Shown one piece after another: positions 14,691 through 52,332 of a stretch of 64,000 nt of DNA. The DNA lies in the NCBI RefSeq assembly GCF_000143415.4, contig NW_003314288.1:882642-946641 (forward strand), written 5' to 3'. The notes under the pieces are model-generated. The model was given only the letters and a program-made list of their open reading frames with translations, did no database searches and was not told the origin of the DNA. Position numbers and translations under genes: made by a program. How positions within the stretch are numbered: the first letter of the stretch is position 1; each line of letters begins with the position of its first letter. The stretch is from Selaginella moellendorffii (lineage: Eukaryota; Plantae; Lycopodiophyta).

Positions 14691-14769
14691 GGGTGAAAGC
14701 CCAAAGCATTCGTCTCCCAAACCTTGGGGGGTTTGGTGAGCTCCAAAAGTATAGTAAGGGGGAGGACTG

Positions 14770-14846
14770 CAGTGGAGCCAGTTTGGCCAGTGGAGCCAGT
14801 TTGGCCAGTGGAGCCAGTTTGGCCAGTGGAGCCAGTTTGGCCAGTG
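14770..14846 (+). repeat. 18-bp tandem repeat (agtggagccagtttggcc, about 4 copies) unique to this LTR copy
   Basis: Reads as (SGASLA)n. The other LTR copies that retain this segment carry one unit. Confidence 0.85.
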
Positions 14847-22071: not shown

Positions 22072-23880
22072 CTATGCTAGATAATATATTTGATAACATA
22101 TGTCATGAATAAATAGTAAGTAACTTGAAAATGTTTTTCCATTATGACAAGCCCACTTCAAAGATGTAGCAGAAAGCATAACAACTGAAGGTTGAACTCC
22201 CTCTCCAAACCACACATTTTTAATGTTACCGTACTTTAACAAGACACGCTTAATACTCCACTTTATCTCCGAATTCACCTTCACCAAACATGGCATCCCA
22301 AGAATAAGATCCACATGATGAAGATCTGTGAGATAAAAAGTCTCCACAAGTGTGGTTTTGCCAACCAACACTTCTAGCCTTTCTACACAAATATTGAAAT
22401 GTTGAGTAAAGGTAGTTGCACCTTCCACCGTGTATGAATGAACTCCTCGTGTCACCAGGACATGCTCCTCAACAAACTTTGTGGGAACAAAGTTCTTATT
22501 GCTCCCACTGTCCAATAAAATCCATATTGGACCGCCACAGAACATGTCTTTCAACATTAAAGCTGATGCATGAGTGTCTTTAACCTTCATCTTGTTCCAC
22601 ACACAGTTAAGTTGACGAGCAACAATCAAAAGTCTCTTCCTCCAACCGGAATGGTCATCCTTGTCATCCTTGCACTGCAAAGTTTGCAACTTCTTAATAT
22701 CTGATTTTTTATTCCCATCCTTGTGTCCACAATGATCATCACGACGATTCTCAATAAAAGGACTCCTCAAACACTTGTGAGACTTATACTTGTCATTGTC
22801 AAGTCGACAAGCAGCATCAAAGAGTTCTTCCAAACTCTTTATAGGCTAAGAATGACACAAGTGTTGCCGCATGCTCTCACTATGAAGGCCATCAATGAAG
22901 TAAGACTTGTTCTGATCTAGATCCTTCGTTAGAACACGGATAATCAAGCGAGTCAACTTCTCAATATAGTCCCCAAGCTTCATTTTCCCTTGCTGAAAAT
23001 GTCAAAGTCCGGTGTAAACATTCTCCATGTCATAGTGAAGGACGTAAATGGAAAGTAGCCTCAAACTCATCCATCATAGACATTAATGGTTTTTTATCTG
23101 CAGCACAAGACTCCTCAAGCCAATTCCACTACCAAAAACCCGCATCACACAAAACTATTGGAATAGCCACTAAAGCCTTTGCATTTGGAGTTCTTCTAAC
23201 AGCTAAGAACTTCTTCACATTAACTAGCCAAGCTAGACACTCATCCATACCACCATCACTGAAAAACATTGGAATCTTGAATTGATCCACCAAGGAAGGT
23301 TTACTTGGAGTGCCACCACAACTAGCCCCGAGTGCCTCAACACGCTCATGCAAAGTACTCATCATGCTATACATTTTGTTTTGCATCTCTTGCTGATTTT
23401 TATTAAGGGCTTGTAGCTCATGAACAACATCTTCCATGGTCCAAACCTTCACAGCTCCATCGGCACCATCATCGGCACTATCATCAGCACCACCATTGAC
23501 AATAGGATTTTAGCATTCAACTTGGTCGGCCATCACAACCAACACCTTTGATACCAATGTTATGACCTGGCACAAAAAATCAACAATCTAGTCTTTCTAG
23601 ACTAAACTATGCCTCCTCTTAAACCCAACCACCCCTGAACTACCTCAAAAACTCCTCTACACCATCACTCTTAAGTTCCTTACCCTTGAGCCTCCCTTTG
23701 ACCAATGTTGACCATGTGGTCAAAGCTGGCGCCTAACAAATTGCCACACTTTGCTGTAATATATCCCCAACATTAACACTCAAAACATTGAGGTCTTCTA
23801 CCATACCCTTGATCTCCATCCCCAAACACAAGCATGCTTACTATAGTAGTTTCATTATAACCACCTAAAGTAATTGCCAT
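22072..23880 (-). mobile_element. Degenerate Ty3/Gypsy 5' part (LTR end, PBS, gag, protease)
   Basis: LTR end at 23558. PBS as reverse complement cctttgatacca at 23545-23556. Gag-like ORF 23129-23452 and aspartic protease ILLDSGSNKNFV..DLILGMP in ORF 22072-22833. The outer LTR boundary is uncertain. Confidence 0.8.
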
Positions 23881-23884
23881 TTGC

Positions 23885-26400
23885 TCTTCAAATGCTTCTC
23901 TAGGTTGAGATAAGCCATCCATATGTTCATCTTTTCCATTTCTTCTCGATAAATTATCTTCTCCAATGCCCTATAAAAAAGAGCTTGGATTGTAACACCT
24001 AAAGAAAAATAGAATCAAATGCGAGTAGAGTGTTACCTTTCAGCTACTGCTCGCACCTTGTCCAGGTCCGCAAGACACAACCAATAAGCCATGCATTTGA
24101 TTCACATGTAGCTACTATTTGGTGACGCTGCTACAAGCCTTTCAAAGTCGTCCTTGGTCTCTGGAGGCTGGTCCTTCTGTAATAACTTCTCTTTTGCTGC
24201 AGCCTCCCTGTTGAGAAGCAGGACATGAGAAGACTAAATATAAACAAGAAGTAACTCTGCTCTTTCAAGTCAATTGGCACTGTATCCTCAACGTCTTTGT
24301 TGAGAGTGGATCGACATGCATAGCTGTGGGAATCGTTTTGATGCCAGATCCAAGTAGTCCTCCTCCTCCCTCTCATCATTATCCATGAGCACATTTGTGT
24401 TCGAAGGCTCTTCATTTATAGCTTCTTCCTCCATCGGCTCGATGTCCTCAGGGGTCAGATATGACACTTTCATTCCAAGAGATATACGTTTGGTTTCCGC
24501 ATCAACCTGTAGAGGGAAATCATAACCCTGTGGTTTTACTAAAGCTTTCGTTCTCACCTTTAGAATCTTTACTTGAACCCATTGGCCGACTTTGTAAAGT
24601 GTTGGCAAGTCTTGAATAAAATCGTAAGACACTTCAGAGACATGACACAAGCAACCTGGAGCACAGACTAAGAACTTAAAACCAAGATAGAGAGAGAGCT
24701 TGCCACATCACTCTCGGCAAGGCTGATGGAAATCCCAAATGCTTCAATGTTGTGTATGCGGCCACTAACGATCTCTCCAGCACCAAACTTCTTCCAGCCA
24801 CTTGAATCTTGTGATGTTGTTGCCGTCAAAGACATTTCAATGTGCCCAGACAATGGCTCGATGCTTAAAATTCTGACAAAGAAGAAGATATCAGCAAACA
24901 CTTCCATACGGAGAAAAGTTCATACCTTCCCGATATCACCTTGCCTGATGGAAACATTTCTGCAGGGTTTTGTACAAACGAGTTCGATAGGTTCTTCAGT
25001 TGAATTCTAGCTTCAAGTGAAGGTGCCAGGACCACAAAACAACCTTTCTCCGTCACATTCCTGACAAAACCCTGCAACACAAAAACAAGTCACGTCCACA
25101 GCATGCAAGGTTTCTGCTTACTTGCACTTCATATCTTGCTTAAGTTCCAACACGGAATTGACAATACGAGCATTGGATGCAGAGTCAAAAAAATTTAATG
25201 CAAATCTCGGAAGTTACCTTTCAAGTGTTTGATAGCTCGGAAGGGACTCAAAACCACCACGTCCACCAACTTACTGAAAGTTCCAAGCCCATCTTTCCCC
25301 TCCCTGGCAAGACCTTACGAACTGTCCCTCTGTAAATAAACTGGCTCGGTCATCAATCCATGTATCGTTACATGAACTTTTCCGAAACTTTCCCATCTGC
25401 CTTGCACAGTATGTCCGCCTACACCAGCAAAAACTCGTGTGATTCGTCAGCCTAACAGGTCGCCTTTCTTGAATTGTTTGTCACTTGTTTTCGGGTGTAG
25501 AGACAAATCCACTTGCTTCCTTTCGTGGTTAACACTTCTTATATGGCACTGGAACGGGTCACCGACTTTGAAGCGCTCTTTAAAACGTTCAAGCTCCGAG
25601 GGATCGTCAGACGTGTCCAGTATAAAAAGGCAGCCTTTAAGATGGGGTGAGAGGACTAGCCATGTCCAGTTGTCCTTTACTTCTTGAACGTATCTGATAA
25701 CCGACTGTTCAATGGTTACGGTCTCGAAAGTAATCACTGAGCATGCAGCATCGTTTCCTGCAAGTCACGATAAGTGAGCTAATTCAAAGGGACACCATAC
25801 AGACCTGCAAGCTCAGATGGACGTAGAGATAAATCCAAAGTGGCAGCATTTCTGTGCTTTCTGCTGGTTTTGCGTTTTGAAAGGATTTTAGCTCGAACAG
25901 TCTGCCCAACACTGTATTTTCTCAATGGGTTCCCTTCTTCATAATGATCAAGACATTTGAGGAGTTAAAAGACAGACTGGAAAACAGAAACGAACCTCTG
26001 TAATGTGCACATTCCCACGTAAGGAGCAGTGGCTGTCCATGGGACAGGGCTTGTCTGCCAGTCCTAGAACTATTGAGTGTTGCAGCCTCCATGAGGTGAT
26101 TTCTTGGGTGATTTGTGACCTGTGCAGTATGAGAAAGAAGTGACGATTCACAGAAGAATTCTAGAAACATGGAGCTCAATCTTCGAAATGTGATCATGAG
26201 CACAGCAGGAAGTTTTGAGAAAGAGGACCTTGGTCTCTTGGAATGCAATGATCACTGCAAATGCCTAGAATGGGTGTCTTCTGAAAGTGCTTAAGCTGTT
26301 GGATTTCATTCCGGCACCTTTTGTGAATGCATTGATCACCACCCATGGCAGATCAAGGATCCTAGCTCAAGCAAGAAACATGTTTGATCAAATCTTGTGC
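23885..26400 (-). pseudogene. RRP5: rRNA biogenesis protein RRP5 fragment (S1 repeats plus start of HAT/TPR region), intron-containing and disrupted
   Basis: S1-type exons QGFVRNVTEKGCFV, GEIVSGRIHNIEAFG, CHVSEVS..YKVGQWVQVKILKVD and ERFKVGDPFQCHI. PETKDDFERLV.ASPNSS and RALEKIIYREEMEKMNIWMAYLNLE follow. The gene is truncated by the Gypsy LTR. The upstream limit is approximate. Confidence 0.8.
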
Positions 26401-27629
26401 AAAACTGTGAGCTCCTGATCACCCATGATTTAACTGTAAGCCCCAGCAAAACCTTATTAAATCTTTGCAGAACTTACCTTTATCAGTGTCTTAGCCACGC
26501 CAGCCTAACAAGCAAGATCCAGGAGAACTTTTGTATCAATCACTACAGCCACTTGATTATATTGTTGCCCATTGCATGGAGAAGAAGCTCAAACTTCTTC
26601 TATCACTGTGATACTCTACTATGAGGAGCAAGTAAAAAGTTCCTTGTTTTCTGTTTATGGACATGCTATTAAGACAAACACATCAGACTACTCAAAAAAA
26701 GTGAACTTTTTGACTAGTAATAATGTTCTTAAAGGAAAGTTTGCAAGATTTTAGTATTGCAAGAGTGTAGGACTTCTTCCTTATATTCTTCACTATTTGC
26801 TTTAAGCTTGCTATAGGAAGAATAAAATTGATAAAAAGAACATTAGTTGAACTCTTTGAGAGATAAACAAGAAGTACATATGAATAAAAAAATGTATTAA
26901 AATGAGTACATCATATAAATTTTTTATTTATGTAAAAATTAACAATATCAAAGCAAACCAAACGTTGTTGCATAGTGTAATGATATCTATCTGAGTTCGG
27001 TTAGGGTTGGTTATGGTCAGTTAGTGTAGATGGTATTGTGTATAATGCTCAACTCTCCACCTAGTAACTCTTATTTTCCTCTAGTGAGTGGCTCTTACTT
27101 CCTCCAATGCAACATATCTCCTCCCTCCACACTCTTCCTGTAGCAACTCTCCTCCATGTCCTCTAGTGCTCCTCCTGCACCAACTCTCTTCCACATTGTA
27201 CTTTTGCCAGTCCTACTCTTGGATTTTTCAGTTTTTTTTTAATTTTCATCAAATCATTCTTTCTCACCCTCTAGCTCCTCCAAAACCCGTTGTGCATTGA
27301 GTCTCCTCCAGCTCCTCCAGCACTCCTCCTATAGCAGCTCTCCAGCTCCTCCAGCACTTCTCCTGCAACAGCTCCCTCTAGCACTACAACAGCTCTCCTC
27401 TAGCTCCTCTAGTAGATGGCTATGCCACGGCTAAGGCCAGCCAAGGTAGTGCTAGCCATGGCCGAGACCTTGTGCCACCATGGCTGTGCTTGCTATGGGC
27501 CATTGGTGATGTAACTTTGGCCCTAGCTGTATGGTTATAGATACCACAGCCAAGGACAACATCATTGGCAATCAAGGTTGCCAGTGGTTGTGGTAAGCTT
27601 GGCAAAACATTATCTTTAACGTTGAGAAA

Positions 27630-30356
27630 GGACCAATTCGCACATTTATTTAGTGAAAAAAAACTTAAGCGACCCACTTTAAAAATTAAGAAAGTTGGGT
27701 TCGCACATTGAAAAAATTTGTGTTGCAAAGTAAACTTATAAGGACTTTTGCATTCGCACATGTCTTAGATTTAAGTGGAAAAACACCCTCGGATTCGCAC
27801 TTTAAAACAATGCATTCCAACACTTAAAATTCACTTAATTCAAATTTTGAAATTTCAAATTCAAATTCAAATGTTTAGAATTATATCCCGGCAAATTTCA
27901 AAGCAAACACGAACGCCACTGGCAAAGACACAGGGAAAACGTGAGGTTCTCTCTAACCTCTTTCGCATCCTCTGGACTGTGCAACTCCTCACAAGGTTCC
28001 CCTTCCGCTTGCTCGGGATCACCATAATCGACAAAGAGGTCCTGGTCCTTGAGCCTTTTCACCTCTTTCCTCCAAGCTTGGATCTCCACCCGAAGATCAG
28101 TCTCCCCAACATCAATCAAGAAATTGTGCAAGATGCAACAACTCTTGATGATGTTGGGAAGGTACTTTTTGTTTCTGATCCAAGAATCTGAACTTCATTT
28201 TAAGAAGTCCAAATGCTTGCTCAATAACAATCCGAGCAAGGTGGATGAAGGTTGAAAGCTGCCTTGGATGGTGTCAGGTTCGACAACCAAAACAAGTGAA
28301 CAAAAGAAAGTAGAATGAAGAAGACTTGTGTGGAATCTGGAGTTGGTACCCTTTGTCCCCCACTAGGTATGGCTTGATCCTATCGTCATATGCTAACACC
28401 ACGGGCGATGTCAGCAGCTCCCTTGCTACAATCTTGTTCCTGAGGGTTGAATTACGAAAAACCCTCATGTCGTGGACGCGTCCTGAAAGCAAAAAAAAAC
28501 ATTTTAGAACCATCCACAACACACAAAGAAACATACCTGGCCACCCAGCGTAGACACTGAGGAACCTCTTCTGGGCATCACAAACCCCTTGCAAGATGAC
28601 CGAGTACCACTGCTTCCGATCGTAGTAGCTCTCGCCATCCAGTCTAGTAGGTCGGATGATCTCGGAGTACAGTCGATCGCTCCAGCAACATTAGGCAGTC
28701 GGGTTCCTATTGCTCATCAAAACTTATAACAATCATAAGAAAATGAACCTGTCACTTGTCGAAAGCCAGCAGCAACAGCTCGAACCACCTTGGCAGTTGA
28801 AGGAAAATGAATCTTGTACCTGAGACACTTGACAATCGCCGCAGTAGTGTCCATGACAATCTCATGAGCTGTGGACTCCCCGATGCTGAACTTGTCCACC
28901 AGATCCAAGTAATCTGTGTTCTTGAAAAGCTTGTACAAAGTCACCCCCAGTCGAACATCCACCGGCAACACACTCCTCCAACCGGTATCTTGCTTCCGGA
29001 TCTCGCTCTCCAGCATGCCACAAATGGTGAAGAAGGTCCTCTTCTCCATCTGAAGTTTCCTCTTCCACCTCCCCACATCATAATACTCCAAAGAAAACTT
29101 ACTCCAGGTGGTGACATTTCGAGGCTTCACCCACCACAGGCCGATGCAAAACCTCCTCCCAATCACAGGCAGCGGGGCTCTTGTCATCCGCAATGTGCAT
29201 TTAAACCCTAAAGCAAAACGGTGAAAGCTGAGATTCCAGCGCTGTGTCTTCGTCATGAGAACATGCTGGCTGCTCCTCCCTCCCCCGCAATCTTCGCGAG
29301 ATGTTTTTCCCGAACGAGATCAATCAGGAGCATGGTCTCAGCATGGTTCCAGTTCTTTCCCCGGGTTCTCTTCGCAGCAGCAGGTGCAGCAAAACCCAAG
29401 GTATTCACAAACTGGACAGCCTCGTCGTCGAGCTCCTCCATGTGAGCATCCGGGTCTTGTTCCAGATCGGGGACGCTGTCATCTCCCTCTTCTTCATGAC
29501 CCCGCCGGGAGCTCTCAATCACTCATGCATGCATGCAACCTAAGAAATGTAAACTCAAAGCCATCTCTGGTTCTCAAAGCAGTTGGAGCTCCCGGCACGC
29601 TGTGCTCCAGGGGAACGCCTCCGGACGTGGCTTGGGCTCCTCCGGGCGCGGCTTGGACTCCTCCCGCTGTGGCTTCGGCTCCTCCCACCCAGGCTTGGCC
29701 TCCTCCTGGCGATGATCCATGGCCTCCTCCTCCCGGAGAAGAACCGCGGCGTCCTCCTCCTAGAGTAGAACCATGGCCTCCTCCTCCCGGGGCACCCCCT
29801 CCTCGAGCCGCCTCAGAACCATGGCCTAATCCTCCCGGAGCCAGATTCAGAGATCCGCGGCCAACCCCGGCCACCCGCGCCCTCCTCCCACTCCATGGCC
29901 ACCTCTCCCTCCATGGGCACCTCTTCCTCCTCCTGTTGGTGAAGATAGAGCACGAGCAGGCCCAGATCCAGCTCGATCGGCCCCATTTCCCAGAGCTCTG
30001 TTTCCTAAAATCGGATTACCTGCTTCCTCCACCTCCTCAGGCCTCTCCTCATAAATCTCCGCGGCTGCTGCCCTGTTTTAATTCTCGGGCCCTGCCGCGA
30101 GATCAGATCTTCTTAGGCACGCGAAAGCCTTACCTAAGATCTTCTCGAATATTTCCGGAATAATTTTTAACAACTTCCCTTAAAATAAAATGACCCTAAC
30201 ACTTTAGGTTTTGAAAATTACTTAAGTTCGCCTTTTTTTTCGTACTAGTAATTTTCCCATAAAAAATAAGGGTAAGTACATTACTTTAGCTTAAGTTATT
30301 GTGCAAATAGGGAACACGTAAATTTTGAACTGTAATTTTCGGGTAACTCTTGGTCC
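27630..30356 (-). mobile_element. PIF/Harbinger-type DNA transposon relic (DDE nuclease plus Myb/SANT-like fragment)
   Basis: HARBI1-like segments VDVRLGVTLYKL..FSIGESTAHEIV, LPNVAGAIDC, LQGVCD..F..VYAGWPG/RVHDMRVFRNS, YLVGDKGY and CCILHNFLI. Trihelix/Myb-like RGKNWNHAETMLLIDL. Subterminal ttcgcac repeats at 27638-27800. Only a 7-bp candidate TIR (ggaccaa/ttggtcc) was seen, so the boundaries are tentative. Confidence 0.75.
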
Positions 30357-30831
30357 AGAGCTAAACTCTTATAAACATCTCTAAACATGCTCATTTAATT
30401 AACCACCAATGAACGGCCAAGATATCTTTACCAGCACTCCCCCACTAATGTCTTTCGAAAATAAAAAAACTATAAGCAAAGAAGATATTATCAAACACTA
30501 TTTTTCCAATGTTTGTTTTTTTCTTATTTTCTACTATTAATTAACTTCCAACTCAATCACACAATATTTGGAGCTGGAAGAATTGAATCCAACTTAATTT
30601 CAGCAAACTGATGAGGATGGACAATTTTTATTTTCATTTCTTTTGCACTTCTTAATTTACATTTCTTAATTTGTTTCTACTCTTCTTATACACACTTTTT
30701 TCGGTGTATTTGGCCCATTATATTTAGCTGAAACACATGTACATGTACACTAGTACACTACTTGTTCAACTTCTTCCAGCCTCTGGTGCCCAACCTCAAG
30801 GCTCTCTTGTGGATGGAGCTAGCCCTACACA

Positions 30832-30857
30832 GTGTGTGTGTGTGTGTGTGTGTGTGT
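30832..30857 (+). repeat. (GT)n microsatellite
   Basis: Directly visible. A shorter copy lies at ~41797-41812. Confidence 0.9.
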
Positions 30858-31393
30858 ATCAACCAGCAGATGCACAAATCGTTGAGAATTAGCTCACAGG
30901 AGAGAGCAAGCAGGTCACCACTCACGACAAGCTCAAAAAATCTGGAAGACGTTGCCGAGGAACTGGTGAGTACGTCGCAAGAAACAAATGCCGTCGTCAC
31001 CAGCTTCCACACGTCTTCAACGTGCTCTAGGAGCACAAACCCAAAGTTGGTCATGCCACAAGCCGCCATCACCTTGCTCCTGGAACATGAGGCAATATTT
31101 GCTATCAGCAAAGAGTTTCGGTACTGGCAAGTCTTCATACTAAGGCTTATTATCTGAATCTGGGCGCTCTGTTTTGGGGCACCTGTTGGCAGGTTTAGTC
31201 AGCATTCCCGGATTCTATCAAAATGAAATTTAAATTTAAGACAAATCCTCCTTTTGCATAGTTTTAACTTTTAAATGTTAATTTTTTCTCCGTGAAGTTC
31301 AGGTTGGCGGCTCACTCAGCGGCCCATGTCTCTGCTTGACTCATGGAGGGTTTAAAACCAATGATAACTGCAAGAAAGAGCACTGACATGTTT

Positions 31394-34300
31394 TCAAAAG
31401 TACTTGTCACAGGAACATCTGCCATCCTGGAACACATGAACCCGACTGGCATCTTTGCAGATGATTAGCCTTTTTTCTAGCTTAGAGATGAGAGCAGTGG
31501 CCGCATGGCAATCGTCACAAACTCGGAGATTTTTCACAATTCTGATGGTCTCCTTCTGGTGCGAGTTCACCAGAGCACACCCCAGCGCAAGCTTCTCACT
31601 GTGGCCGCACAGGTGATCCTCTTTCTCTTCCTCGGGTATGTATTTTAGAACGTTGATCACATCGCTCGCGTACCCCTCCTCTTTCATTCTCAGCAACAAT
31701 TGCTTGAGCTTGGCCGCAATCTCGTCGCTCTGTGAGTGACTCCTATCCCCGACAGAAAAAGAATGCACTTTTCCTGAGCTAACATCCGTCCACCAGCTTC
31801 TCCCGGGCTCCCTGAAGCTGCTTTCACCTCTCATTTTCTCCACAACAGCGGCCCTTTCACTGAGCATCCCCAGGTTTCCAAATATATTGGCCATCAATGC
31901 GTAGGGCGTGCCGCTCTTGGGATCCATCTCCACAAGACGCTCAAACGCGAGAATGCCGATCGTGTAATTCTTCCACTTCCGGCAGGCTCCGAGCAGGGAC
32001 GTCCAAACCACTGCATCCGGTTCAAAAGGCATGGCTCTGAGAACTCTCACAGCTTCGTCGAGGAGGTTAGCTCGCCCGAGCATATCGATCAGGCACACAT
32101 AATGCTCCAGACGTGGCTTAACTCCAAACTGCTTGGGCATTTCATCCAGAAGCTGCCTTCCTTTCCCCACCAGACCACCATGGCTGCAAGCGTTCAACAC
32201 CAAGACAAAACTCACATCGTCAGCTTTACAGCCCTCCTCCTGAGTCATGGAATAGAAACGCTCCAAGGCCTCAATCGATCGGCCCTGGAGAGTGTAAGCC
32301 TGTATGAGAGAGTTCCAGAGACCCGTGTCGTCCCGAGCTCGGCACTCGTCAAACGCTTCCTGAGCAGAATCAACATCGCCGCATTTGCCGTAGAAGCTCA
32401 CCAGGCTGGAGCCCAGAACTGGATCGTTTTTCAGCAGCCCTTTATGCTTCGCCAGTTGGTGAATCTCCCTCCCGAGCTTGATCGCCATCACACTCCCGCA
32501 AGCAACAAGGACGCAGGTGTAGGTGCAAGCATTAGCTTGAATGGTGTTATCAGCTCTCAGGGCAGAGTAGTACTCCAGAGCAAGTTCAGCTCGCCCGTTC
32601 GTGTTGCAGCCCTGGATGATCGCGGTGTAGGACACAACACTCCGACTTCCCATGGCGTGGAAAATCTTGCGAGCCTTCTCAAGCTCGCCACACTTGCAGT
32701 ACATGTCTACCAGGCAATTCGCCACGAACAGATCTAGCTGTTTCTTCTCCTTGCTCAGCATTGAATGGATCTCCATCCCAATGCGTAGAGCTCTCTCCCT
32801 CTTCTCGCTGGATTCGGTAGCAAGTGTGGAGCAGGCGCTGATCACCACGACATGAGTCCGATCATCGGGTTGAATGGTGTTATCAGCTCTCAGGGCAGAG
32901 TAGTACTCCAGAGCAAGTTCAGCTCGCCCGTTCGTGTTGCAGCCCTGGATGATCACGGTGTAGGACACAACACTCCGAGTTCCCATGGAGTGGAAAATCT
33001 TGCGAGCCTCCTCAAGTTCGCCACACTTGCAGTACATGTCTACCAGGCAATTCGCCACGAACAGATCTAGCTGTTTCTTCTCCTTGCTCAGCATTGAATG
33101 GACTTCCATCCCGATGCGTAGAGCTCTCTCCCTCTTCTCGCTGGATTCGGTAGCAAGTGTGGAGCAGGCGCTGATCACCACGACGTGAGTCCGATCGTCG
33201 GGTTGAATGGTGTTATCAGCTCTAAGGGCAGAGTAGTACTCCAGAGCAAGTTCAGCTCGCCCGTTCGTGTTGCAGCCCTGGATGATCGCGGTGTAGGACA
33301 CAACACTCCGAGTTCCCATGGAGTGGAAAATCTTGCGAGCCTCCTCAAGCTCGCCACACTTGCAGTACATGTCTACCAGGCAAGTCGCCATGTACAGACC
33401 TAGATGTTTCTTCTCCTTGCTCAGTACTGAATGGACTTCCATCCCGATGCGTAGAACTCTCTCCCTCTTCTCGCTGGATTCGGTAGCAAGTGTGGAGCAG
33501 GCGCTGATCACCGCGACATGAGTCCGATCGTTGGGTTGAATGGTGGTACAAGCTCTCAGGGCAGAGTAGTACTCCAGAGCAAGTTCAGCTCGCCCGTTCG
33601 TGTTGCAGCCCTGGATGATCGCGGTGTAGGACACAACACTCCGAGTTCCCATGGAGTGGAAAATCTTGCGAGCCTCCTCAAGCTCGCGACACTTGCAGTA
33701 CATGTCTACCAGGCAATTCGCCACGAACAGATCTAGCTGTTTCTTCTCCTTGCTCAGCATTGAATGGATCTCCATCCCAATGCGTAGAGCTCTCTCCCTC
33801 TTCTCGCTGGATTCGGTAGCAAGTGTGGAGCAGGCGCTGATCACCACGACATGAGTCCGATCATCGGGTTGAATGGTGTTATCAGCTCTCAGGGCAGAGT
33901 AGTACTCCAGAGCAAGTTCAGCTCGCCCGTTCGTGTTGCAGCCCTGGATGATCACGGTGTAGGACACAACACTCCGAGTTCCCATGGAGTGGAAAATCTT
34001 GCGAGCCTCCTCAAGTTCGCCACACTTGCAGTACATGTCTACCAGGCAATTCGCCACGAACAGATCTAGCTGTTTCTTCTCCTTGCTCAGCATTGAATGG
34101 ACTTCCATCCCGATGCGTAGAGCTCTCTCCCTCTTCTCGCTGGATTCGGTAGCAAGTGTGGAGCAGGCGCTGATCACCACGACGTGAGTCCGATCGTCGG
34201 GTTGAATGGTGTTATCAGCTCTAAGGGCAGAGTAGTACTCCAGAGCAAGTTCAGCTCGCCCGTTCGTGTTGCAGCCCTGGATGATCGCGGTGTAGGACAC

Positions 34301-35812
34301 AACACTCCGAGTTCCCATGGAGTGGAAAATCTTGCGAGCCTCCTCAAGCTCGCCACACTTGCAGTACATGTCTACCAGGCAAGTCGCCATGTACAGACCT
34401 AGATGTTTCTTCTCCTTGCTCAGTACTGAATGGACTTCCATCCCGATGCGTAGAACTCTCTCCCTCTTCTCGCTGGATTCGGTAGCAAGTGTGGAGCAGG
34501 CGCTGATCACCGCGACATGAGTCCGATCGTTGGGTTGAATGGTGGTACAAGCTCTCAGGGCAGAGTAGTACTCCAGAGCAAGTTCAGCTCGCCCGTTCGT
34601 GTTGCAGCCCTGGATGATCGCGGTGTAGGACACAACACTCCGAGTTCCCATGGAGTGGAAAATCTTGCGAGCCTCCTCAAGCTCGCGACACTTGCAGTAC
34701 ATGTCTACCAGGCAATTCGCCACGAACAGATCTAGCTGTTTCTTCTCCTTGCTCAGCATTGAATGGATCTCCATCCCAATGCGTAGAGCTCTCTCCCTCT
34801 TCTCGCTGGATTCGGTAGCAAGTGTGGAGCAGGCGCTGATCACCGCGACATGTGTCCAATCGTCGGGTTGAATGGTGTTATCAGCTCTCAGGGCAGAGTA
34901 GTACTCCAGAGCAAGTTCAGCTTGCCCATTCGAGCCGCAGCCCTGGATGATCGCGTTGTAGGACACAACACTCCGAGTTCCCATGGAGTGGAAAATCTTG
35001 CGAGCCTCCTCAAGTTCGCCACACTTGCAGTACATGTCTACCAGGCAATTCGCCACGAACAGATCTACCTGTTTCTTCTCCTTGCTCAGCATTGAATGGA
35101 CTTCCATCCCGATGCGTAGAGCTCTCTCCCTCTTCTCGCTGGATTCGGTAGCAAGTGTGGAGCAGGCGCTGATCACCGCGACATGTGTCCGACCGTTGGG
35201 TTGAATGGTGGTACAAGCTCTCAGGGCAGAGTAGTACTCCAGAGCAAGTTCAGCTTGCCCGTTCGAGCCGCAGCCCTGGATGATCGCGTTGTAGGACACA
35301 ACACTCCGGGTTCCCATGGAGTCGAAAATCTTGCGAGCCTCCTCAAGCTCGCCACACTTGCAGTACATATCGATCAATCCCGTCAACAAGTAGATGTTGC
35401 TTTTGTGCTCATCACTCTTGAGCACAGCTTCATGGGCTTGTTTTCCCAAAGAAAGGGATCTGCTCTCAGCTGAGTCTCTCACGCGGTGTATCAGCCTCCC
35501 TAAACTCACCGGTTCATCACCAGCTACAGGTGGGGTATGTGGAGATTTGTAGCGGGCCGTGGTGGCCTTACCTACAGATGGGTCAGCGAGCGACTCGAGT
35601 TTTGCAGAGACTGTTTTCCTGTTGGCGATCCACAGGCTCTCTCCGGTAGAAACATGTTTGAAATCCGGGTAGGACTCTGAGAAGAACTTGTTTTTCTTCT
35701 TGAACCTATTGTCCCACCAGAAAGTGGGATCCCTGAACTCCATGAGATTGTTGAGAAATGACACACACACCACACAAACCCTAGCGCTGCACGCATACCC
35801 TAGAAATCCCAT
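31394..35812 (-). CDS. PLS-class PPR protein with E1/E2 and DYW-type (WW-subtype-like) cytidine deaminase domain; putative organellar C-to-U editing factor
   Basis: Uninterrupted 1472-aa ORF with about 32 PPR motifs, P2-L2-S2-E1-E2, PGRSWW box, HSEK and CDDCH zinc ligands, and C-terminus CSCDKYF. The true start codon and targeting peptide are uncertain. Confidence 0.93.
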   Translation of the reverse strand: MGFLGYACSARVCVVCVSFLNNLMEFRDPTFWWDNRFKKKNKFFSESYPDFKHVSTGESLWIANRKTVSAKLESLADPSVGKATTARYKSPHTPPVAGDEPVSLGRLIHRVRDSAESRSLSLGKQAHEAVLKSDEHKSNIYLLTGLIDMYCKCGELEEARKIFDSMGTRSVVSYNAIIQGCGSNGQAELALEYYSALRACTTIQPNGRTHVAVISACSTLATESSEKRERALRIGMEVHSMLSKEKKQVDLFVANCLVDMYCKCGELEEARKIFHSMGTRSVVSYNAIIQGCGSNGQAELALEYYSALRADNTIQPDDWTHVAVISACSTLATESSEKRERALRIGMEIHSMLSKEKKQLDLFVANCLVDMYCKCRELEEARKIFHSMGTRSVVSYTAIIQGCNTNGRAELALEYYSALRACTTIQPNDRTHVAVISACSTLATESSEKRERVLRIGMEVHSVLSKEKKHLGLYMATCLVDMYCKCGELEEARKIFHSMGTRSVVSYTAIIQGCNTNGRAELALEYYSALRADNTIQPDDRTHVVVISACSTLATESSEKRERALRIGMEVHSMLSKEKKQLDLFVANCLVDMYCKCGELEEARKIFHSMGTRSVVSYTVIIQGCNTNGRAELALEYYSALRADNTIQPDDRTHVVVISACSTLATESSEKRERALRIGMEIHSMLSKEKKQLDLFVANCLVDMYCKCRELEEARKIFHSMGTRSVVSYTAIIQGCNTNGRAELALEYYSALRACTTIQPNDRTHVAVISACSTLATESSEKRERVLRIGMEVHSVLSKEKKHLGLYMATCLVDMYCKCGELEEARKIFHSMGTRSVVSYTAIIQGCNTNGRAELALEYYSALRADNTIQPDDRTHVVVISACSTLATESSEKRERALRIGMEVHSMLSKEKKQLDLFVANCLVDMYCKCGELEEARKIFHSMGTRSVVSYTVIIQGCNTNGRAELALEYYSALRADNTIQPDDRTHVVVISACSTLATESSEKRERALRIGMEIHSMLSKEKKQLDLFVANCLVDMYCKCGELEKARKIFHAMGSRSVVSYTAIIQGCNTNGRAELALEYYSALRADNTIQANACTYTCVLVACGSVMAIKLGREIHQLAKHKGLLKNDPVLGSSLVSFYGKCGDVDSAQEAFDECRARDDTGLWNSLIQAYTLQGRSIEALERFYSMTQEEGCKADDVSFVLVLNACSHGGLVGKGRQLLDEMPKQFGVKPRLEHYVCLIDMLGRANLLDEAVRVLRAMPFEPDAVVWTSLLGACRKWKNYTIGILAFERLVEMDPKSGTPYALMANIFGNLGMLSERAAVVEKMRGESSFREPGRSWWTDVSSGKVHSFSVGDRSHSQSDEIAAKLKQLLLRMKEEGYASDVINVLKYIPEEEKEDHLCGHSEKLALGCALVNSHQKETIRIVKNLRVCDDCHAATALISKLEKRLIICKDASRVHVFQDGRCSCDKYF
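32531..35302 (-). repeat. In-frame 333-bp tandem array: 8 P-L-S triplets plus a ninth P motif; units 3-5 duplicated as 6-8 (999 bp)
   Basis: VVSY motif recurs every 111 aa. Identical antisense ORFs recur at a 999-bp offset (e.g. 33185/34184, 33518/34517). Confidence 0.95.
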
Positions 35813-36162
35813 TAAACTGTGGTCCTGTTTTCTGTTTTTTCTTTTTCCAATTCTTTTCCTTTTTAAACTTTACAATGTCACAGCTTAACTGCAGCATTAT
35901 TGTTAAAAAAAAATCTCTTTGATATATATAGAAAGTGAGCCAGCAGCAATCAGTTGCTCAAGAGCTGAAGAATCAGTACATGCATAATTTTCAGACAATC
36001 TTCTAACTGGCTGAACATCAGGTTTTTATGATTATTATTATTATTACTAACAACACGCACGAACTTCCTAGAAATCCCGATTTATTATTCTCTGCATTCA
36101 TTTTTTATATGATCTGTTACTGCATGCACTTAACTGTAGGTAGTCTTCAGTTCTTCAATAGG

Positions 36163-37810
36163 CTAAAAGATATCAATACACTCAATATGCAAAAATAAAC
36201 CACACTCTACACAAATTGAATAAAAAATGCTCTTCATAGGGCCAGAAGCCCCAGGGCACCATTTTCATGCAGAACAGCTTCGCAAATGACTCTTGCCCGG
36301 GGCCCATGCACAGGAGTCCTCGGGCAGTGGTAAAACCTCACAAGGCCTCACGTACTTATATTCACCCTGGGCTTCTGGCTGCTCCGCAACATACCTTACC
36401 ACACCAAACTCTTCACACATGAAGCCACACACGGAGGAAAAAACCACACGAGGCCTCATGTGCTTACATTCAGTCCTTATATCTGTTCTTGGCCTTGCTC
36501 GGTTCATCTCCTTTGTTGTCCACCTGCGCTTCTTTACTTCATGTTTTTGCTTACATGCTTCGATTGACATCTTCAGATTTTCAAGCGAACGATTGTGGCA
36601 TACCGTGGCTACGTTTTTCGGCAGAGCTTGGAGGTGCTGAAAGCGGCATTAAGTTCATGGAGGATTGATCTTGATTTGGATTGTATGGATCTCTATAAAT
36701 TTTGAAACTTAAGTTTATTTTTCTCCTTTTTCTTCTGTGTTGCCAAAATAACTGGTGTCAAACTTGCTTTTGCAGACTATCTCTACTACTTCTGGATGCG
36801 ATCAAGGCCTGCTGCTCATTGCTTCAAAGGAGGAGATGATAATTGATCCCCAAAGAGCGAGCTCGATGGTTTTGTTGCTTTCATCAAGTTATCATTCTGT
36901 GCGATCTGAAACACCACATCGTCCACTGTACTTTCACAGGTTTCGAGACAGGTACCCGGGAAAGCTGTATTCCATTGTTGTTCCTCAGGACCTGGAGTTG
37001 TTTTGCCGCCTCAAGTGTGAGCTGATCAAGATGAGGGAGAAGCTTGCAATGGTGGAGGCTTGGGCTCGAGCAAGGTTGCAGATGCAGTATGAGGATGATT
37101 TCTTCTACAACTAGCTTTGTGGATCTTTCCACATTGAGATCGTCGAACGGAGAGTGTTGTAGCATAAGTTATCTCCTGGAGAAATGGTCCTGGCTCAAGG
37201 AGCAGTTTGCACGCATCCGCACGTCAAGATTGTTGGAGAGCTCAACTGGAAGATGGAAAAAGGCCAAGGTGACTCATGGGGTTTCAAAACCTGCACTCGG
37301 CTTGGTAAGGTTTGGTGAGTTGAATAAGTATGATGAGTTTGAAGAGACAATCGCACAAAAAAAGGACGGGGGGGGGGGGACGTCTAGACGTGAAGCGTGC
37401 TAGCTCTCCTGAATGGCTTCAAAGAGGTGAGGTCTGAATCTTGGCTTGTGCTCCTTGTAAGAGCTAACTAGCTAGCAAAAACAGAGGAGACGGTGAAGAG
37501 GATGCCTCTTGAACTCCAAGAGAACAACAGACCTTTTTTTTTAAGGAGGGGAGAAGCTGCTAGCAGCTCAGAAGTAGGAGCAGTGGAGCAAGAGGAGGGC
37601 TGATGTCATCCCTGTGCGCCAAAACTGCTGGGTGGTTCGGGGCTTGGTTAAAGTAGGCAACCGGGTGGAGGCAGGGGGTTGGGAGCAATCCAGAGGCTTG
37701 AGGTATGACTTGTCTTTTCTACCTGGTGGAACTCCATCCGAGCATTCCTACTTCCCTCTTTTAAGCCGTTTTTACTATTAGCTCGTGTTAACTCTTAACT
37801 CACATTTATA
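36163..37810. repeat. Inverted copy of the 1779-3451 block, forming most of the spacer between the two PPR-DYW genes
   Basis: Reverse-complement similarity along its length. Confidence 0.9.
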
Positions 37811-37917
37811 CATTGTGAAGTTTAAAAAGGAAAAGAATTAGAAAAAGAAAAAACAGAAAACACGAGCTTTTTACTACTACAGTTAAGTGCAGAATAACAA
37901 ATCGGGATTTCTAGGGT

Positions 37918-40900
37918 ATGCGTGCGGCGTTTGTGTGGTGTGTCTGTCATTTCTCAACAATCTCATGCAGTGGAAAACGTTTTTCAGGGATCCCACTTTC
38001 TGGGGACAACAGGTTCAAGAAGAAAAACAAGTTCTTCTCAGAGTCCTACCCGGATTTCAAACATGTTTCTACCGGAGAGAGCCTGTGGATCGCCAACAGG
38101 AAAACACCAACCTGGGTCTCTGCAAAACTCGAGTCGCTCGCTGACCCAGCTGTAGGTAAGGCCACCACGGCCCGCTACAAATCTCCACATACCCCACCTG
38201 TAGCTGGTGATGAACCGGTGAGTTTAGGGAGGCTGATACACCGCGTGAGAGACTCAGCTGAGAGCAGATCCCTTTCTTTGGGAAAACAAGCCCATGAAGC
38301 TGTGCTCAAGAGTGATGAGCACAAAAGCAACATCTACTTGTTGACGGGATTGATCGATATGTACTGCAAGTGTGGCGAGCTTGAGGAGGCTCGCAAGATT
38401 TTCGACTCCATGGGAACCCGGAGTGTTGTGTCCTACAACGCGATCATCCAGGGCTGCGGCTCGAACGGGCAAGCTGAACTTGCTCTGGAGTACTACTCTG
38501 CCCTGAGAGCTTGTACCACCATTCAACCCAACGATTGGACATATGTCGCGGTGATCAGCGCCTGCTCCAGACTTGCTACCGAATCCAGCGAGAAGAGGGA
38601 GAAAGCTCTACGCATCGGGATGGAGATCCATTCAATGCTGAGCAAGGAGAAGAAACAGGTAGATCTGTTCGTGGCGACTTGCCTGGTAGACATGTACTGC
38701 AAGTGTGGCGAGCTTGAGGAGGCTTGCAAGATTTTCCACTCCATGGGAACTCGGAGTGTTGTGTCCTACAACGCGATCATCCAGGGCTGCGGCTCGAACG
38801 GGCAAGCTGAACTTGCTCTGGAGTACTACTCTGCCCTGAGAGCTTGTACCACCATTCAACCCAACGATCGGACTCATCTCGCGGTGATCAGCGCCTGCTC
38901 CACACTTGCTACCGAATCCAGCGAGAAGAGGGAGAGAGCTCTACGCATCGGGATGGGGATCCATTCAATGCTGAGCAAGGAGAAGAAACAGCTAGATCTG
39001 TTCGTGGCGACTTGCCTGGTAGACATGTACTGCAAGTGTGGCGAGCTTGAGGAGGCTCGCAAGATTTTCCACTCCATGGGAACTCGGAGTGTTGTGTCCT
39101 ACAACGCGATCATCCAGGGCTGCGGCTCGAACGGGCAAGCTGAACTTGCTCTGGAGTACTACTCTGCCCTGAGAGCTTGTACCACCATTCAACCCAACGA
39201 TCGGACTCATCTCGCGGTGATCAGCGCCTGCTCCACACTTGCTACCGAATCCAGCGAGAAGAGGGAGAGAGCTCTACGCATCGGGATGGGGATCCATTCA
39301 ATGCTGAGCAAGGAGAAGAAACAGGTAGATCTGTTCGTGGCGACTTGCCTGGTAGACATGTACTGCAAGTGTGGCGAGCTTGAGGAGGCTCGCAAGATTT
39401 TCGACTCCATGGGAACTCGGAGTGTTGTGTCCTACAACGCGATCATCCAGGGCTGCGGCTCGAACGGGCAAGCTGAACTTGCTCTGGAGTACTACTCTGC
39501 CCTGAGAGCTGATAACACTATTCAACCCGACAATCGGACACATGTCGCGGTGATCAGCGCCTGCTCCACACTTGCTACCGAATCCAGCGAGAAGAGGGAG
39601 AGAGCTCTACGCATCGGGATGGAAGTCCATTCAGTACTGAGCAAGGAGAAGAAACATCTAGGTCTGTACATGGCGACTTGCCTGGTAGACATGTACGGCA
39701 AGTGTGGCGAGCTTGAGGAGGCTCGCAAGATTTTCCACTCCATGGGAACTTGGAGTGTTGTGTCCTACACCGCGATCATCCAGGGCTGCCACACGAACGG
39801 GCGAGCTGAACTTGCTCTGGAGTACTACTCTGCCCTGAGAGCTTGTACCACCATTCAACCCAACGATCGGACTCATGTCGCGGTGATCAGCGCCTGCTCC
39901 AGAGTTTCTACCGAATCCAGCGAGAAGAGGGAGAGAGCTCTACGCATCGGGATGGACATCCATTCAATGCTGAGCAAGGAGAAGAAACATCTAGGTCTGT
40001 ACATGGCGACTTGCCTGGTAGACATGTACTGCAAGTGTGGCGAGCTTGAGGAGGCTCGCAAGATTTTCCACTCCATGGGAACTCGGAGTGTTGTGTCCTA
40101 CACCGCGATCATCCAGGGCTGCAACACGAACGGGCGAGCTGAACTTGCTCTGGGGTACTACTCTGCCCTGAGAGCTGATAACACCATTCAAGCTAATGCT
40201 TGCACCTACACCGGCGTCCTTGTTGCTTGCGGGAGTGTGATGGCGATCAAGCTCGGGAGGGAGATTCACCAGCTGGCGAAGCATAAAGGGCTGCTGAAAA
40301 ACAATCCAGTTCTGGGCTCCAGCCTGGTGAGCTTCTATGGCAAATGCGGCGATGTTGATTCTGCTCAGGAAGCGTTTGACGAGTGCCGATCTCGGGACAA
40401 CACGGGTCTCTGGAACTCTCTCATACAGGCTTACACTCTCCAGGGCCGATCAATCGAGGCCTTGGAGCGTTTCTATTCCATGACTCAGGAGGAGGGCTGT
40501 AAAGCTGACGATGTGAGTTTTGTCTCGGTGTTGAACGCTTGCAGCCATGGTGGTCTGGTGGGGAAAGGAAGGCAGCTTCTGGATGAAATGCCCAAGCAGT
40601 ATGGAGTCAAGCCACGTCTGGAGCATTATGTGTGCCCGATCGATATGCTCGGGCGAGCTAACCTCCTCGACGAAGCTGTGAGAGTTCTCAGAGCCATGCC
40701 TTTTGAACCGGATGCAGTGGTTTGGACGTCCCTGCTCGGAGCCTGCCGGAAGTGGAAGAATTACACGATCGGCAAACTCGCGTTTGAGCGTCTTGTGGAG
40801 ATGGATCCCAAGAGCGGCACGCCCTATGCATTGATGGCCAATATATTTGGAAACCTGGGGATGCTCAGTGAAATGGCCGCTGTTGTGGAGAGAATGAGGG

Positions 40901-41333
40901 TGAAGACAGCTTCAGGGAGCCCGGGAGAAGCTGGTGGACGGATGTTAGCTCTCTTTCTCTTCCTCGGGTATGTCTTTTAGAACGTTGATCACATAGCTCA
41001 CGTAGCCCTCCTCTTTCATTCTCAGCAACAATTGCTTGAGCTTGGCCGCAATCTCGTCGCTCTGTGAGTGACTCCTATCCCCGACAGAAAAAGAATGCAC
41101 TTTTCCTGGATCACCTGTGCGGCCACAGTGAGAAGCTTGCGCTGGGGTGTGCTCTGGTGAACTCACACCAGAAGGAGACCATCAGAATTGTGAAAAATTT
41201 CCGAGTTTGTGACGATTGCCATGCGGCCACTGCTCTCATCTCTAAGCTGGAAAAAAGGCTAATCATCTACAAAGATGCCAGTCGGGTTCATGTGTTCCAG
41301 GATGGCAGATGTTCCTGTGACAACTACTTTTGA
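37918..41333 (+). pseudogene. Paralogous PPR-E-DYW gene with disrupted DYW domain (could still give a 1020-aa PPR-E protein)
   Basis: ORF 37918-40980 has 5 triplets plus a sixth P (38425-40197). There is a 1-bp deletion near 40899 relative to the paralogue and an inversion at 40952-41107. The catalytic tail HSEK..CDDCH..DNYF is stranded in ORF 41064-41333. Confidence 0.88.
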
Positions 41334-42874
41334 AAACATGTCAGTGCTCTTTCTTGCAGTTATCCCTGGTTTTAAACCCTCCGTGAGTCAAGCAGAAACA
41401 TGGGCCGCTGAGTGAGCATGCCTCGTCAAAGTACCGCCGCCAACCTGAACTTCACGGAGAAAAAAGTAACATTTAAAAGTTAAAACTATGCAAAAGGAGG
41501 ATGACAAGAATCGGGGAATACTGACTAAACTTGCCAACAGGTGCCCCAAAACGGAGCGCCCAGATTCAGATAATAAGCTTTAGTATGAAGACTTGCTGAT
41601 AGGAAGTACTGCCTCATGTTCCGGGAGCAAGGTGATGGTGGCTTGTGGCATGACCAACTTTGGGTTTGTGCTCCTAGAGCACGTTGAAGACGTGTGGAAG
41701 CTGGTGACAATGGCATTTGTTTCTTGCGACATACTCACCAGTTCCCTCTGGTGCCCAACCTCAAGGCTCTCTTGTGGATGGAGCTAGCCCTACACAGTGT
41801 GTGTGTGTGTGTATCAACCAGCAGATGCACAAATTGTTGAGAATTAGCAACAAGTGTGTATTATAGGCTTAGTACGTAGTGTACTAGTGTACATGTACAT
41901 GTGTTTCAGCTAAATATAATGGGCCAAATACACTGAAAAAGTGTGTATAAGAAGAGTAGAAACAAATTAAGAAATGTAAATTAAGAAGTGCAAAAGAAAT
42001 GAAAATAAAAATTGTCCATCCTCATCAGTTTGCTGAAATTAAGTTGGATTCAATTCTTCCAGCTCCAAATATTGTGATTGAGTTGTAAGTTAATTAATAG
42101 TAGAAAATAAGAAAAAAAACAAACATTGGAAAAATAGTGTTTGATAATATCTTCTTTGCTTTTAGTTTTTTATTTTCGAAAGAAAATTACTGGGGAAGTG
42201 CTGGTAAAGATATCTTTGCCGTTCGTTGGTGGTTAATTAAATGAGCATGTTTAGAGATGTTTATAAGAGTTTAGCTCTGGACGAAAATTAAAGTTCAAAA
42301 TTTACGTTTTCCCTATTTGCACAATAACTTAAGCTAAAGTAATGTACTTACCCTTATTTTTTATGGGAAAATTATTAGTATTTTGGATTCGCACGAAAAA
42401 AAAGGCGAATTTAGAGGATTCTAAAGTAAAAACCCCGACCAAATCTAAAGTGTTGGGTCATTTTAAGTTGTTAAAAATTATTCCGGAAATATTCGAGAAG
42501 ATTCTTAGGTTAGGCTTTGGCGTGCCTGCGAAGAAGATCTGATCTCGCGGCACGGCCCGAGAATTAAAACATGGAGAGGCCTGAGGAGGTGGAGGAAGCA
42601 GGTAATCCGATTTTAGGGTTGGAAGAGGAGGAAGTCGCCATAGGGAAATGGGGATCTGGGCCTGTTCGTGCTCTATCTTCACCAACAGGAGGAGGAAGAG
42701 GTGCCCATGGACGGAGAGGTGGCCATGGAGTGGGAGGAGGGCGCGGGGTGGCCGGGGTTGGCCGCGGATCTCTGAATCTGGCCCCGGGAGGATTAGGCCA
42801 TGGTTCTGAGGCGGCTCGAGGAGGGGTTGCCCCGGGAGGAGGAGGCCATGGTTCTACTCTAGGAGCAGGACCTC

Positions 42875-43900
42875 TTCGTCAGAAGTTTAAGCATCGAGCC
42901 ATTGTCTGGGCACATTGAAATGTCTTTGGCGGCAACAACATCACAAGATTCAAATGGCTGGAAGAAGTTTGGTGCTGGAGAGATCGTTAGTGGCTGCATA
43001 CACAACATTGAAGCATTTGGGATCTTCATCAGCCTTGCCAAGAGCAATGTGGTAAGCTCTCTCTCTATCTTGGTTTCAAGTTCTTAGTCTGTGCTCCAAG
43101 GTTGCTTGTGTCATGTCTCTGAAGTGTCTTACGATTTTATTCAAGACTTGTCAACACTTTGCAAAGTCGGCCAATGGGTTCAAGTAAAGATTCTAAAGGT
43201 GAGAACGAAAGCTTGAGTAAAACCACAGGGTTATGATTTCCCTCTACAGGTTGATGCGGAAACCAAACGTATATCTCTTGGAATGAAAGCGTCATATCTG
43301 ACCCCTGAGGATGGCATCGAGCCGATGGAGGAAGAAGCTATAAATAAAGAGCCTTCGAACACAAATGTGCTCATGGATAATGATGAGAGGGAGGAGGAGG
43401 ACTACTTGGATCTGGCATCAAAACGATTCCCACAGCTATGCATGTTGATCCACTCTCAACAAAGACGTTGAGGATACAGTGCCAATTGACTTGAAAGAGC
43501 AGAGTTACTTCTTGTTTATATTTAGTCTTCTCATGTCCTGCTTCTCGACAGGGAGGCTGCAGCAAAAGAGCAGTTATTACAGAAGGACCAGCCTCCAGAG
43601 ACCAAGGACGACTTTGAAAGGCTTGTAGCAGCGTCACCAAATAGTAGCTCCATGTGAATCAAATGCATGGCTTATTGGTTGTGTCTTGCGGACCTGGACA
43701 AGGTGCGAGCAGTGGCTGAAAGGTAACACTCTACTCACATTTGATTCTATTTTTCTTTAGGTGTTACAATCCAAGCTCTTTTTTATAGGGCATTGGAGAA
43801 GATAATTTATTGAGAAGAAATGGAAAAGATGAACAAATGTATGGCTTGCACTCACAATGTAATGTTTTTGATTTTCCTACAACCTAGAGAAGCATTTGAA
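42875..43900 (+). pseudogene. RRP5: Second RRP5 fragment
   Basis: Inverted copy of ~23885-24880 (ORFs 42902-43087 and 43283-43471). Confidence 0.8.
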
Positions 43901-52330: not shown

Positions 52331-52332
52331 GC

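What the first reader, a model, noticed from the sequence alone, without database searches (positions are those of the whole stretch)
32531..35302. Modular, TALE-like PPR array: two half-motif alleles are shuffled to give all four RNA-recognition code pairs
Seen: the 111-aa units are near-identical, yet each P motif combines one of two 5' halves (VVSY-N..CGSNGQ or VVSY-T..CNTNGR) with one of two 3' halves (RACTTIQP-N or RADNTIQP-D). All four combinations occur. The 5th/last pairs of P1-P9 read NN, ND, TN, TD, TD, TN, TD, TD, TN; P9 ends in a third form, RADNTIQAN. The L/S junction also swaps as a block (QLD-LFVAN vs HLG-LYMAT), changing S position 5. Known: in the PPR code these two positions specify the base (NN C/U, ND U, TN A, TD G), and natural PPR motifs are normally highly degenerate. 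Inference: unequal crossover or gene conversion within a homogenised array acts as a combinatorial generator of new editing specificities, fused to an intact deaminase.
Basis: partly seen in the sequence, partly recalled or inferred. Interest (0 to 1): 0.9.

Follow-up and report, generated by a model that had tools for sequence, protein, structure and literature searches.

The report
Shuffled near-identical PPR editing-factor repeats
A spikemoss gene for an RNA-editing-type enzyme is built from eight almost identical RNA-reading blocks whose base-choosing residues have been reshuffled by DNA exchange across a family of about 14 copies, so copies are predicted to read different RNAs, but no target, location or activity has been shown.

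Summary
Observation confirmed. The window is Selaginella moellendorffii v1.0 scaffold GL377592.1. Gene A (35812-31394, minus) encodes a PDF-like motif, eight 333-bp PLS units (95.6% identical), a fixed PLS/P2L2S2-E-E+ tail and a DYW domain. The code pairs are as stated, but units 3-4 equal 6-7 (a 999-bp duplication). Fourteen copies were found; 13 carry 1-8 units. Across 54 units all four pairs are common (NN 17, TD 15, ND 11, TN 11). Exchange is not special to the code pair: 153 of 159 distant site pairs show four gametes. Shared variants do concentrate at RNA-contact positions (7/12 vs 10/99; matched-null p about 2e-4) and are mostly amino-acid-changing (22:2), while rare variants and the C-terminus show purifying selection. 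Best reading: RFL-like recombinational diversification of a PLS-DYW family, probably under selection. Limits: positions -4 to -8 are essentially fixed, no transit peptide is recognisable, gene A's DYW lacks several conserved residues (ends KYF), gene A's own transcription was not shown, and no target could be tested. Precedent exists for P-class RFL genes; I found no paper on this family. The scan noted the same family earlier on other copies.

The parts
31394..35812 (-). Gene A open frame, 1472 aa, PLS-class PPR-E-E+-DYW; the likelier start is the Met at 35743, which is in frame in the undamaged copies
35621..35743 (-). PDF-like motif (WWDNR...PDFKH...LW) at the N-terminus; gene A lacks 4 residues at its start and 3 just after it relative to paralogues
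   Evidence: matches N-terminal motifs of other lycophyte PPR proteins; no Pfam model hit
35303..35395 (-). Leading S motif; its last 69 bp match the repeat unit
32639..35302 (-). Eight 333-bp P(36)-L(44)-S(31) units; P codes NN, ND, TN, TD, TD, TN, TD, TD; S codes NS, NS, TS, NS, NS, TS, NS, NS
32690..34844 (-). Recent 999-bp (three-unit) duplication: 1156 bp identical at period 999
32531..32638 (-). Terminal P9 (TN; most paralogues TD), predicted position -9
31793..32530 (-). Unique L-S-P2-L2-S2-E1-E2 tail; P2 (32326-32219, ND) at -6; about 98% identical among copies
31394..31768 (-). E+ and DYW domain: HSE, CxxC and second-zinc ligands kept; ends KYF (family NYF, consensus DYW)
37918..41333 (+). 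Gene B, inverted paralogue with five units (38425-40089; NN, NN, NN, ND, TN); broken by a 1-bp deletion near 40900 and a 158-bp inversion (40951-41108) in E+/DYW

Best explanation
Gene A is one copy of a young, segmentally duplicated S. moellendorffii family of PDF-PLS-DYW genes. One PLS triplet was tandemly amplified. A few founder variants diverged by point mutation, preferentially at RNA-contact residues: an NN type that sits first in most genes and a TD type like the terminal P. Unequal crossing-over and short conversion tracts, within and between copies, now mix these patches and change unit number (shown from sequence). By the PPR code each copy has a different predicted sequence from -9 upstream on a shared tail reading G-U at -7/-6 (inferred). 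Diversifying or balancing selection on specificity probably keeps the alternatives, as for RFL genes (inferred from statistics). The protein most likely binds single-stranded RNA and deaminates, or helps deaminate, a C; organelle RNA is the default substrate (not shown).
For: Unit number 1-8 in 13 copies on 7 scaffolds. Code pairs NN 17, TD 15, ND 11, TN 11 with r2 = 0.04 between position 5 and last; mean r2 falls from 0.50 (under 20 bp) to 0.04 (over 120 bp); at least 3 recombination events within gene A and 17 in the family. Units differ as much within genes (15.2 nt) as between genes (16.0), and nearest neighbours are often in another gene. Polarity: first unit NN in 10/12, last full unit TD in 7/11, terminal P TD in 9/12. 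Common variation hits 4/6 fifth/last positions vs 13/105 others (Fisher p = 0.005) and 7/12 positions 2/5/13/last vs 10/99; both survive a null matched for natural tolerance from 1349 triplets (p about 0.002 and 0.0002) and rank 1 of 111 circular shifts; the result holds without genes A and B. Variants in 7 or more of 54 units are 22 replacement to 2 silent (p = 0.02 against a mutation-class-corrected neutral expectation), whereas rare unit variants (omega 0.49, p = 0.0004) and the C-terminus (omega 0.55-0.61, p = 0.01-0.02) show purifying selection. AlphaFold model pLDDT 94, best match synthetic PPR-DYW 9KFX, TM 0.80. Family-consensus contigs cover the coding part but not the distal 3' flank in a probable RNA run.
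Against: The statistics rest on about 17 codons that each probably arose once and are partly linked. Position 13 was added after seeing the data, and the 22:2 result depends on the frequency cut-off (24:6, p = 0.16 with a looser one). No recognisable transit peptide; the frame starts at the PDF-like motif. Relative to the solved PPR-DYW structure the family lacks K578, F596, H598, D608 and W610, and Ala changes at D and W reduce editing (PMC13324415). No contig with gene-A-private bases was seen, in RNA-like or DNA runs. At least two copies are broken and two have a damaged PDF. No organelle sequence was available to test targets.
Confidence: 0.6

Rival explanations
1. Neutral tandem-array turnover: an internal duplication in a repeat-rich, segmentally duplicated region expands and mixes without benefit. 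Selection only preserves fold and frame, and the distal motifs do not matter for function.
For: Four gametes in 153/159 distant site pairs, so shuffling is indiscriminate. Exact recent block duplications in A and L010. Enzyme-proximal motifs fixed, and distal motifs generally matter less (PMC10482289; PMC13324415). Broken copies exist. Flanks of all loci are shared repeat modules.
Against: Common variants are enriched at contact positions beyond a tolerance-matched null. The changes at P5, P-last and S5 are all to canonical code residues (N/T, N/D, N/T), which are 2 of 8 possible single-base replacements each (my hand count). Common variants are richer in replacements than rare ones (Fisher p = 0.028).
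Confidence: 0.25
2. Homogenisation with selective retention: two older, different triplets were made alike by gene conversion, and only the residues needed to match one fixed ancestral target escaped, leaving islands of difference around code positions. Shuffling is a by-product rather than a source of novelty.
For: Differences cluster in patches around P5-P16, P30-P36 and L31-S5, some with adjacent double changes; the first and terminal motifs carry opposite types.
Against: Inside the patches the alternative codons share their third bases, and only 1 of the 14 commonest variants is silent, which old islands would not show. Predicted distal targets differ among copies with open frames.
Confidence: 0.1
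3. Assembly artefact: the mosaics and the 999-bp duplication come from mis-joined reads of paralogues or haplotypes.
For: All loci come from one assembly (GCA_000143415.2); L004 is the window itself. Units 3-4 are identical to 6-7. One array has a gap (L002). Long reads were not available.
Against: Gene A has no gaps and an unbroken 4.4-kb frame. Many recombinant units carry private changes and recur in other genes. Position 5 and last are 92 bp apart, within one read. Independent runs hold the unit sequence with alternative letters.
Confidence: 0.05

Closest known systems
Restorer-of-fertility-like (RFL) P-class PPR genes: rice clusters (PMC5075784), radish Rfo (PMC2848758), barley (PMC7380019)
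   Same: Clustered young paralogues; unequal crossing-over and conversion duplicate, delete and move motifs; high variation at positions 5 and last changes the predicted target; Rfo has a duplicated five-repeat block.
   Different: RFLs are P-class without a deaminase and act on mitochondrial sterility transcripts. Here a single PLS triplet is amplified to about 95% DNA identity within one gene, is shuffled below the motif level, and is fused to E/DYW and a PDF-like motif.
PLS-class PPR-DYW C-to-U editing factors (PPR56, OTP86; synthetic consPPR-DYW, PDB 9KFX)
   Same: P-L-S triplets, P2-L2-S2-E1-E2-DYW tail, HxE/CxxC signature, same predicted fold (TM 0.80).
   Different: Natural arrays are degenerate (median 51% best internal identity in my sample). 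This one has about 32 motifs, a 44-aa L motif, no recognisable transit peptide and a diverged DYW end (KYF/NYF).
TALE repeat arrays of Xanthomonas (from my own knowledge, not tested)
   Same: Near-identical repeats with variable specificity residues, reshuffled by recombination.
   Different: Unrelated fold and DNA target. In TALEs variation is nearly confined to two adjacent residues; here 10 non-contact codons vary as much, the two code residues are 92 bp apart, and the unit is a triplet. An analogy, not membership.
OSB proteins (PDF motif; PMC6963530)
   Same: A roughly 45-residue motif with the Pro-Asp-Phe signature.
   Different: No OB fold; fused to PPR-DYW; ssDNA binding untested; I could not align it to a named OSB protein with these tools.

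Membership tests
PLS-class PPR-DYW protein | P-L-S triplets followed by P2-L2-S2-E1-E2-DYW | tested here: met
   Pfam PPR, E_motif, Eplus, DYW_deaminase above cut-off; alignment and fold match to 9KFX
PLS-class PPR-DYW protein | HxE...CxxC catalytic signature and second zinc site | tested here: met
   HSE, CDDCH, H and CSC present
PLS-class PPR-DYW protein | Conserved D-Y-W end, salt-bridge Lys and PPR-interface residues | tested here: not met
   K578 to A, F596 to V, H598 to V, D608 to K (family N), W610 to F against consPPR-DYW
Organellar C-to-U editing factor | N-terminal organelle targeting peptide | tested here: inconclusive
   Shared in-frame Met opens directly on the PDF-like motif; upstream ATG is in different frames among copies; no predictor run; an upstream exon is not excluded
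Organellar C-to-U editing factor | Code-matching organelle editing site | not testable with these tools
   No organelle sequence or editome available; no match above chance in the nuclear loci held
Organellar C-to-U editing factor | Expressed | tested here: inconclusive
   Family-consensus contigs in probable RNA runs; gene-A-private bases not seen
RFL-type fast-evolving PPR family | Intra- and intergenic recombination changing motif number and order | tested here: met
RFL-type fast-evolving PPR family | Excess variation at RNA-contact residues | tested here: met
   (modest number of independent sites)
RFL-type fast-evolving PPR family | P-class only, no C-terminal enzyme domain | tested here: not met
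   PLS class with E/E+/DYW
TALE | TAL repeat sequence and fold | tested here: not met
   Only PPR/TPR-type families and folds matched
OSB-type PDF motif | About 50-aa motif with PDF signature, homologous to OSB1-4 | tested here: inconclusive
   Signature present and shared with other lycophyte PPR N-termini; no OSB protein retrieved

The most novel reading that the evidence does not exclude
The family is a naturally reprogrammable deaminase system in an arms race outside the organelles: with no transit peptide and an ssDNA-binding-type PDF motif, copies generate new specificities by repeat shuffling to edit or mutate transposon, viral or other foreign nucleic acid.
Probability: 0.08. Interest if true: 0.9.

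Novelty: new variant of a known kind. Interest (0 to 1): 0.56.

Why it matters
S. moellendorffii has the most PPR genes among 364 plant genomes surveyed (3,861; PMC13386178), and how new editing specificities arise is open. This family is a natural experiment: about 14 nearly isogenic proteins that differ mainly in unit number and code residues, so the code, the role of distal motifs and the birth of specificity can be tested directly. It would extend RFL-style recombinational diversification to deaminase-bearing PLS proteins. The arrays are also hidden in public protein sets, because the RefSeq models splice them out.

Tried and rejected
Full-length homologue search found nothing above 37% because annotated relatives are short, array-less models; a 702-aa query found them. 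L004 is the window's own source, so it is not independent support. No clear allelic partner of gene A was found; L011 shares one N-terminal deletion but has other flanks and 4 units. 'Position 5/last is a privileged recombination interval' rejected. 'The array is an intron', as in RefSeq models, is unsupported: probable RNA contigs run from the terminal P into the array and no joints were listed, though only the best loose ends were shown. A scan of held loci with gene A's predicted target gave a best 14/18 match, about chance by a hand binomial estimate. PDF could not be tied to named OSB proteins. Ten literature searches found no description of this family; subscription papers such as the 2020 Molecular Plant PPR survey were not held. 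Read laying was given only 30900-32860, leaving out the long repeat as its rule requires, so unit order was not checked by reads.
Full report
Identity. The window holds two PPR frames, gene A (35812-31394, minus, 1472 aa) and gene B (37918 onward, plus). Relatives at 78-95% are all Selaginella moellendorffii, and locus L004 from assembly GCA_000143415.2, scaffold GL377592.1, is the same DNA as the window. An earlier scan note had suggested the organism.

Observation. TRF gives period 333 with 8.5 copies in A and 5.5 in B. Each unit is P(36)-L(44)-S(31). The register is right too: after P9 comes a unique L-S-P2-L2-S2-E1-E2-DYW tail, confirmed against the synthetic PPR-DYW 9KFX. The AlphaFold model of the last unit plus tail is confident (pLDDT 94) and matches 9KFX best (TM 0.80); the 9-residue L insertion lies within a confidently modelled helical pair. 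Two corrections: units 3-4 equal 6-7 within a 1156-bp exact match at period 999, so gene A has six distinct units; and S position 5 is tied to the L/S junction block only in A.

How unusual. Among 316 fetched proteins of 600 aa or more, the best internal 100-aa identity has median 51%, and three besides gene A reach 90%. One is an amoeba protein with near-identical PLS units that differ at code residues, and clubmoss PDF-PPR proteins have 67-71% identical triplets. Homogenised arrays are rare but not unique.

The family. Twelve look-ups yielded 14 copies on seven scaffolds; 13 carry 1 to 8 units and one is truncated. This assembly holds both haplotypes (my own knowledge), so some copies may be alleles; I resolved no pair. 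Flanks are a patchwork of shared modules at 85-96% identity, and A and B lie in an inverted duplication. B and L007b are broken; most others keep an open frame. RefSeq models remove or fragment the arrays, which hides them from protein databases.

Shuffling. In 54 complete units from 12 copies the P code pairs are NN 17, TD 15, ND 11, TN 11. Linkage between position 5 and last is 0.04, but 153 of 159 common-site pairs more than 60 bp apart also show four gametes, and linkage decays with distance. So exchange is real and general, not aimed at the code. The P30-P36 patch is perfectly linked internally yet unlinked from both sides, while P5 and L3 on either side keep r2 = 0.43, which suggests short conversion tracts. 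Units are as different within genes as between them. First units are mostly NN and last and terminal ones mostly TD, so I infer two founder types at the array ends with recombinants between.

Are code positions special? Seventeen of 111 codons are commonly variable; they include 4 of 6 fifth/last positions (p = 0.005). With the published contact set 2, 5, 13 and last (PMC13324415) it is 7 of 12 against 10 of 99. A null matched for tolerance in 1349 natural triplets gives p about 0.002 and 0.0002, and both sets rank first of 111 circular shifts, the fifth/last set only narrowly. The signal remains without genes A and B. Rare variants and the tail show purifying selection after correcting for mutation class (omega 0.49 and 0.55-0.61), while the commonest variants are 22 replacement to 2 silent. 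Cautions: few independent mutations, linkage, a cut-off-dependent replacement test, and position 13 added after inspection.

Function. By the code (PMC10482289) the copies have different predicted strings from -9 upstream on a constant G-U at -7/-6; five of twelve share the same -12 to -6 core. Proximal motifs matter most in tested factors, so shuffling would tune rather than freely reprogram. The catalytic HSE and CxxC and the second zinc ligands are present, but five conserved fold or interface residues differ, and gene A has a private Lys at the D of D-Y-W, so activity is uncertain. The protein starts with a PDF-like motif shared with other lycophyte PPR proteins, shortened in A, with no recognisable transit peptide. 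In probable RNA run X5, long contigs equal the family consensus over the tail and leave the distal flank uncovered; X2 and X13 cover only the array end; none showed gene-A-private bases, and at most of those places neither did the DNA run. The family is probably transcribed; gene A is undecided.

Comparison. Recombination-driven change of motif number and code residues is published for P-class RFL genes (PMC5075784; PMC2848758). What differs here is a PLS-DYW protein with one triplet amplified to about 95% identity and shuffled below motif level. TALE is an analogy only. Ten searches found no paper on this family, with the library's limits. Earlier notes of this scan describe the same family on other copies; these are not independent evidence.

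Verdict. A real feature and a new variant of a known kind. Shuffling is shown, selection on contact residues is moderately supported, and new editing specificities are inferred but untested. Interest 0.56.

Noticed in passing
window 40900-41108: Gene B is broken by a 1-bp deletion and a clean 158-bp inversion covering E+ and the start of DYW; RefSeq model P0131 splices around it.
   Followed up: partly
RefSeq models P0121, P0123, P0125, P0131, P0205 (L001, L003, L004, L005, L009): Annotation treats the repeat array as intron or chops it, although the genomic frame is open; such arrays may be systematically missing from protein databases.
   Followed up: partly
window 22708-35878 against 37810-45078; L001-L012 flanks: A and B sit in an inverted duplication, and all loci share flanking modules (S1-domain and F5/8-type gene fragments among them) in shuffled order; the family seems to spread inside large segmental duplications.
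   Followed up: partly
L010 7475-10138: Independent exact block duplication in another copy (units 2=5, 3=6), again a three-unit step as in gene A.
   Followed up: no
protein P0231 (Balamuthia mandrillaris) and P0213/P0216 (Diphasiastrum complanatum): Other PLS arrays with high internal identity; the amoeba protein's units show ND, TN and SD code pairs, and the clubmoss proteins also start with PDF-like motifs.
   Followed up: partly
protein P0215 (Ancistrocladus): Perfectly repeated 97-aa PPR block, possibly an annotation or assembly artefact.
   Followed up: no
window 35760-35812 and paralogues: A short GT-rich tract upstream of the shared Met varies in length, putting an upstream ATG in or out of frame among copies.
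   Followed up: partly
window 14357-20159, 46294-52336, 55918-56460: Several copies of a repeat element with 6/12-bp tandem arrays and strong strand skew, in both orientations, 86-92% alike.
   Followed up: no
Read-laying runs X2 and X13, window 30900-32530: These probable RNA runs show contigs over the array end but none over the E/DYW tail at 97% likeness; may be filtering or low depth, unexplained.
   Followed up: no
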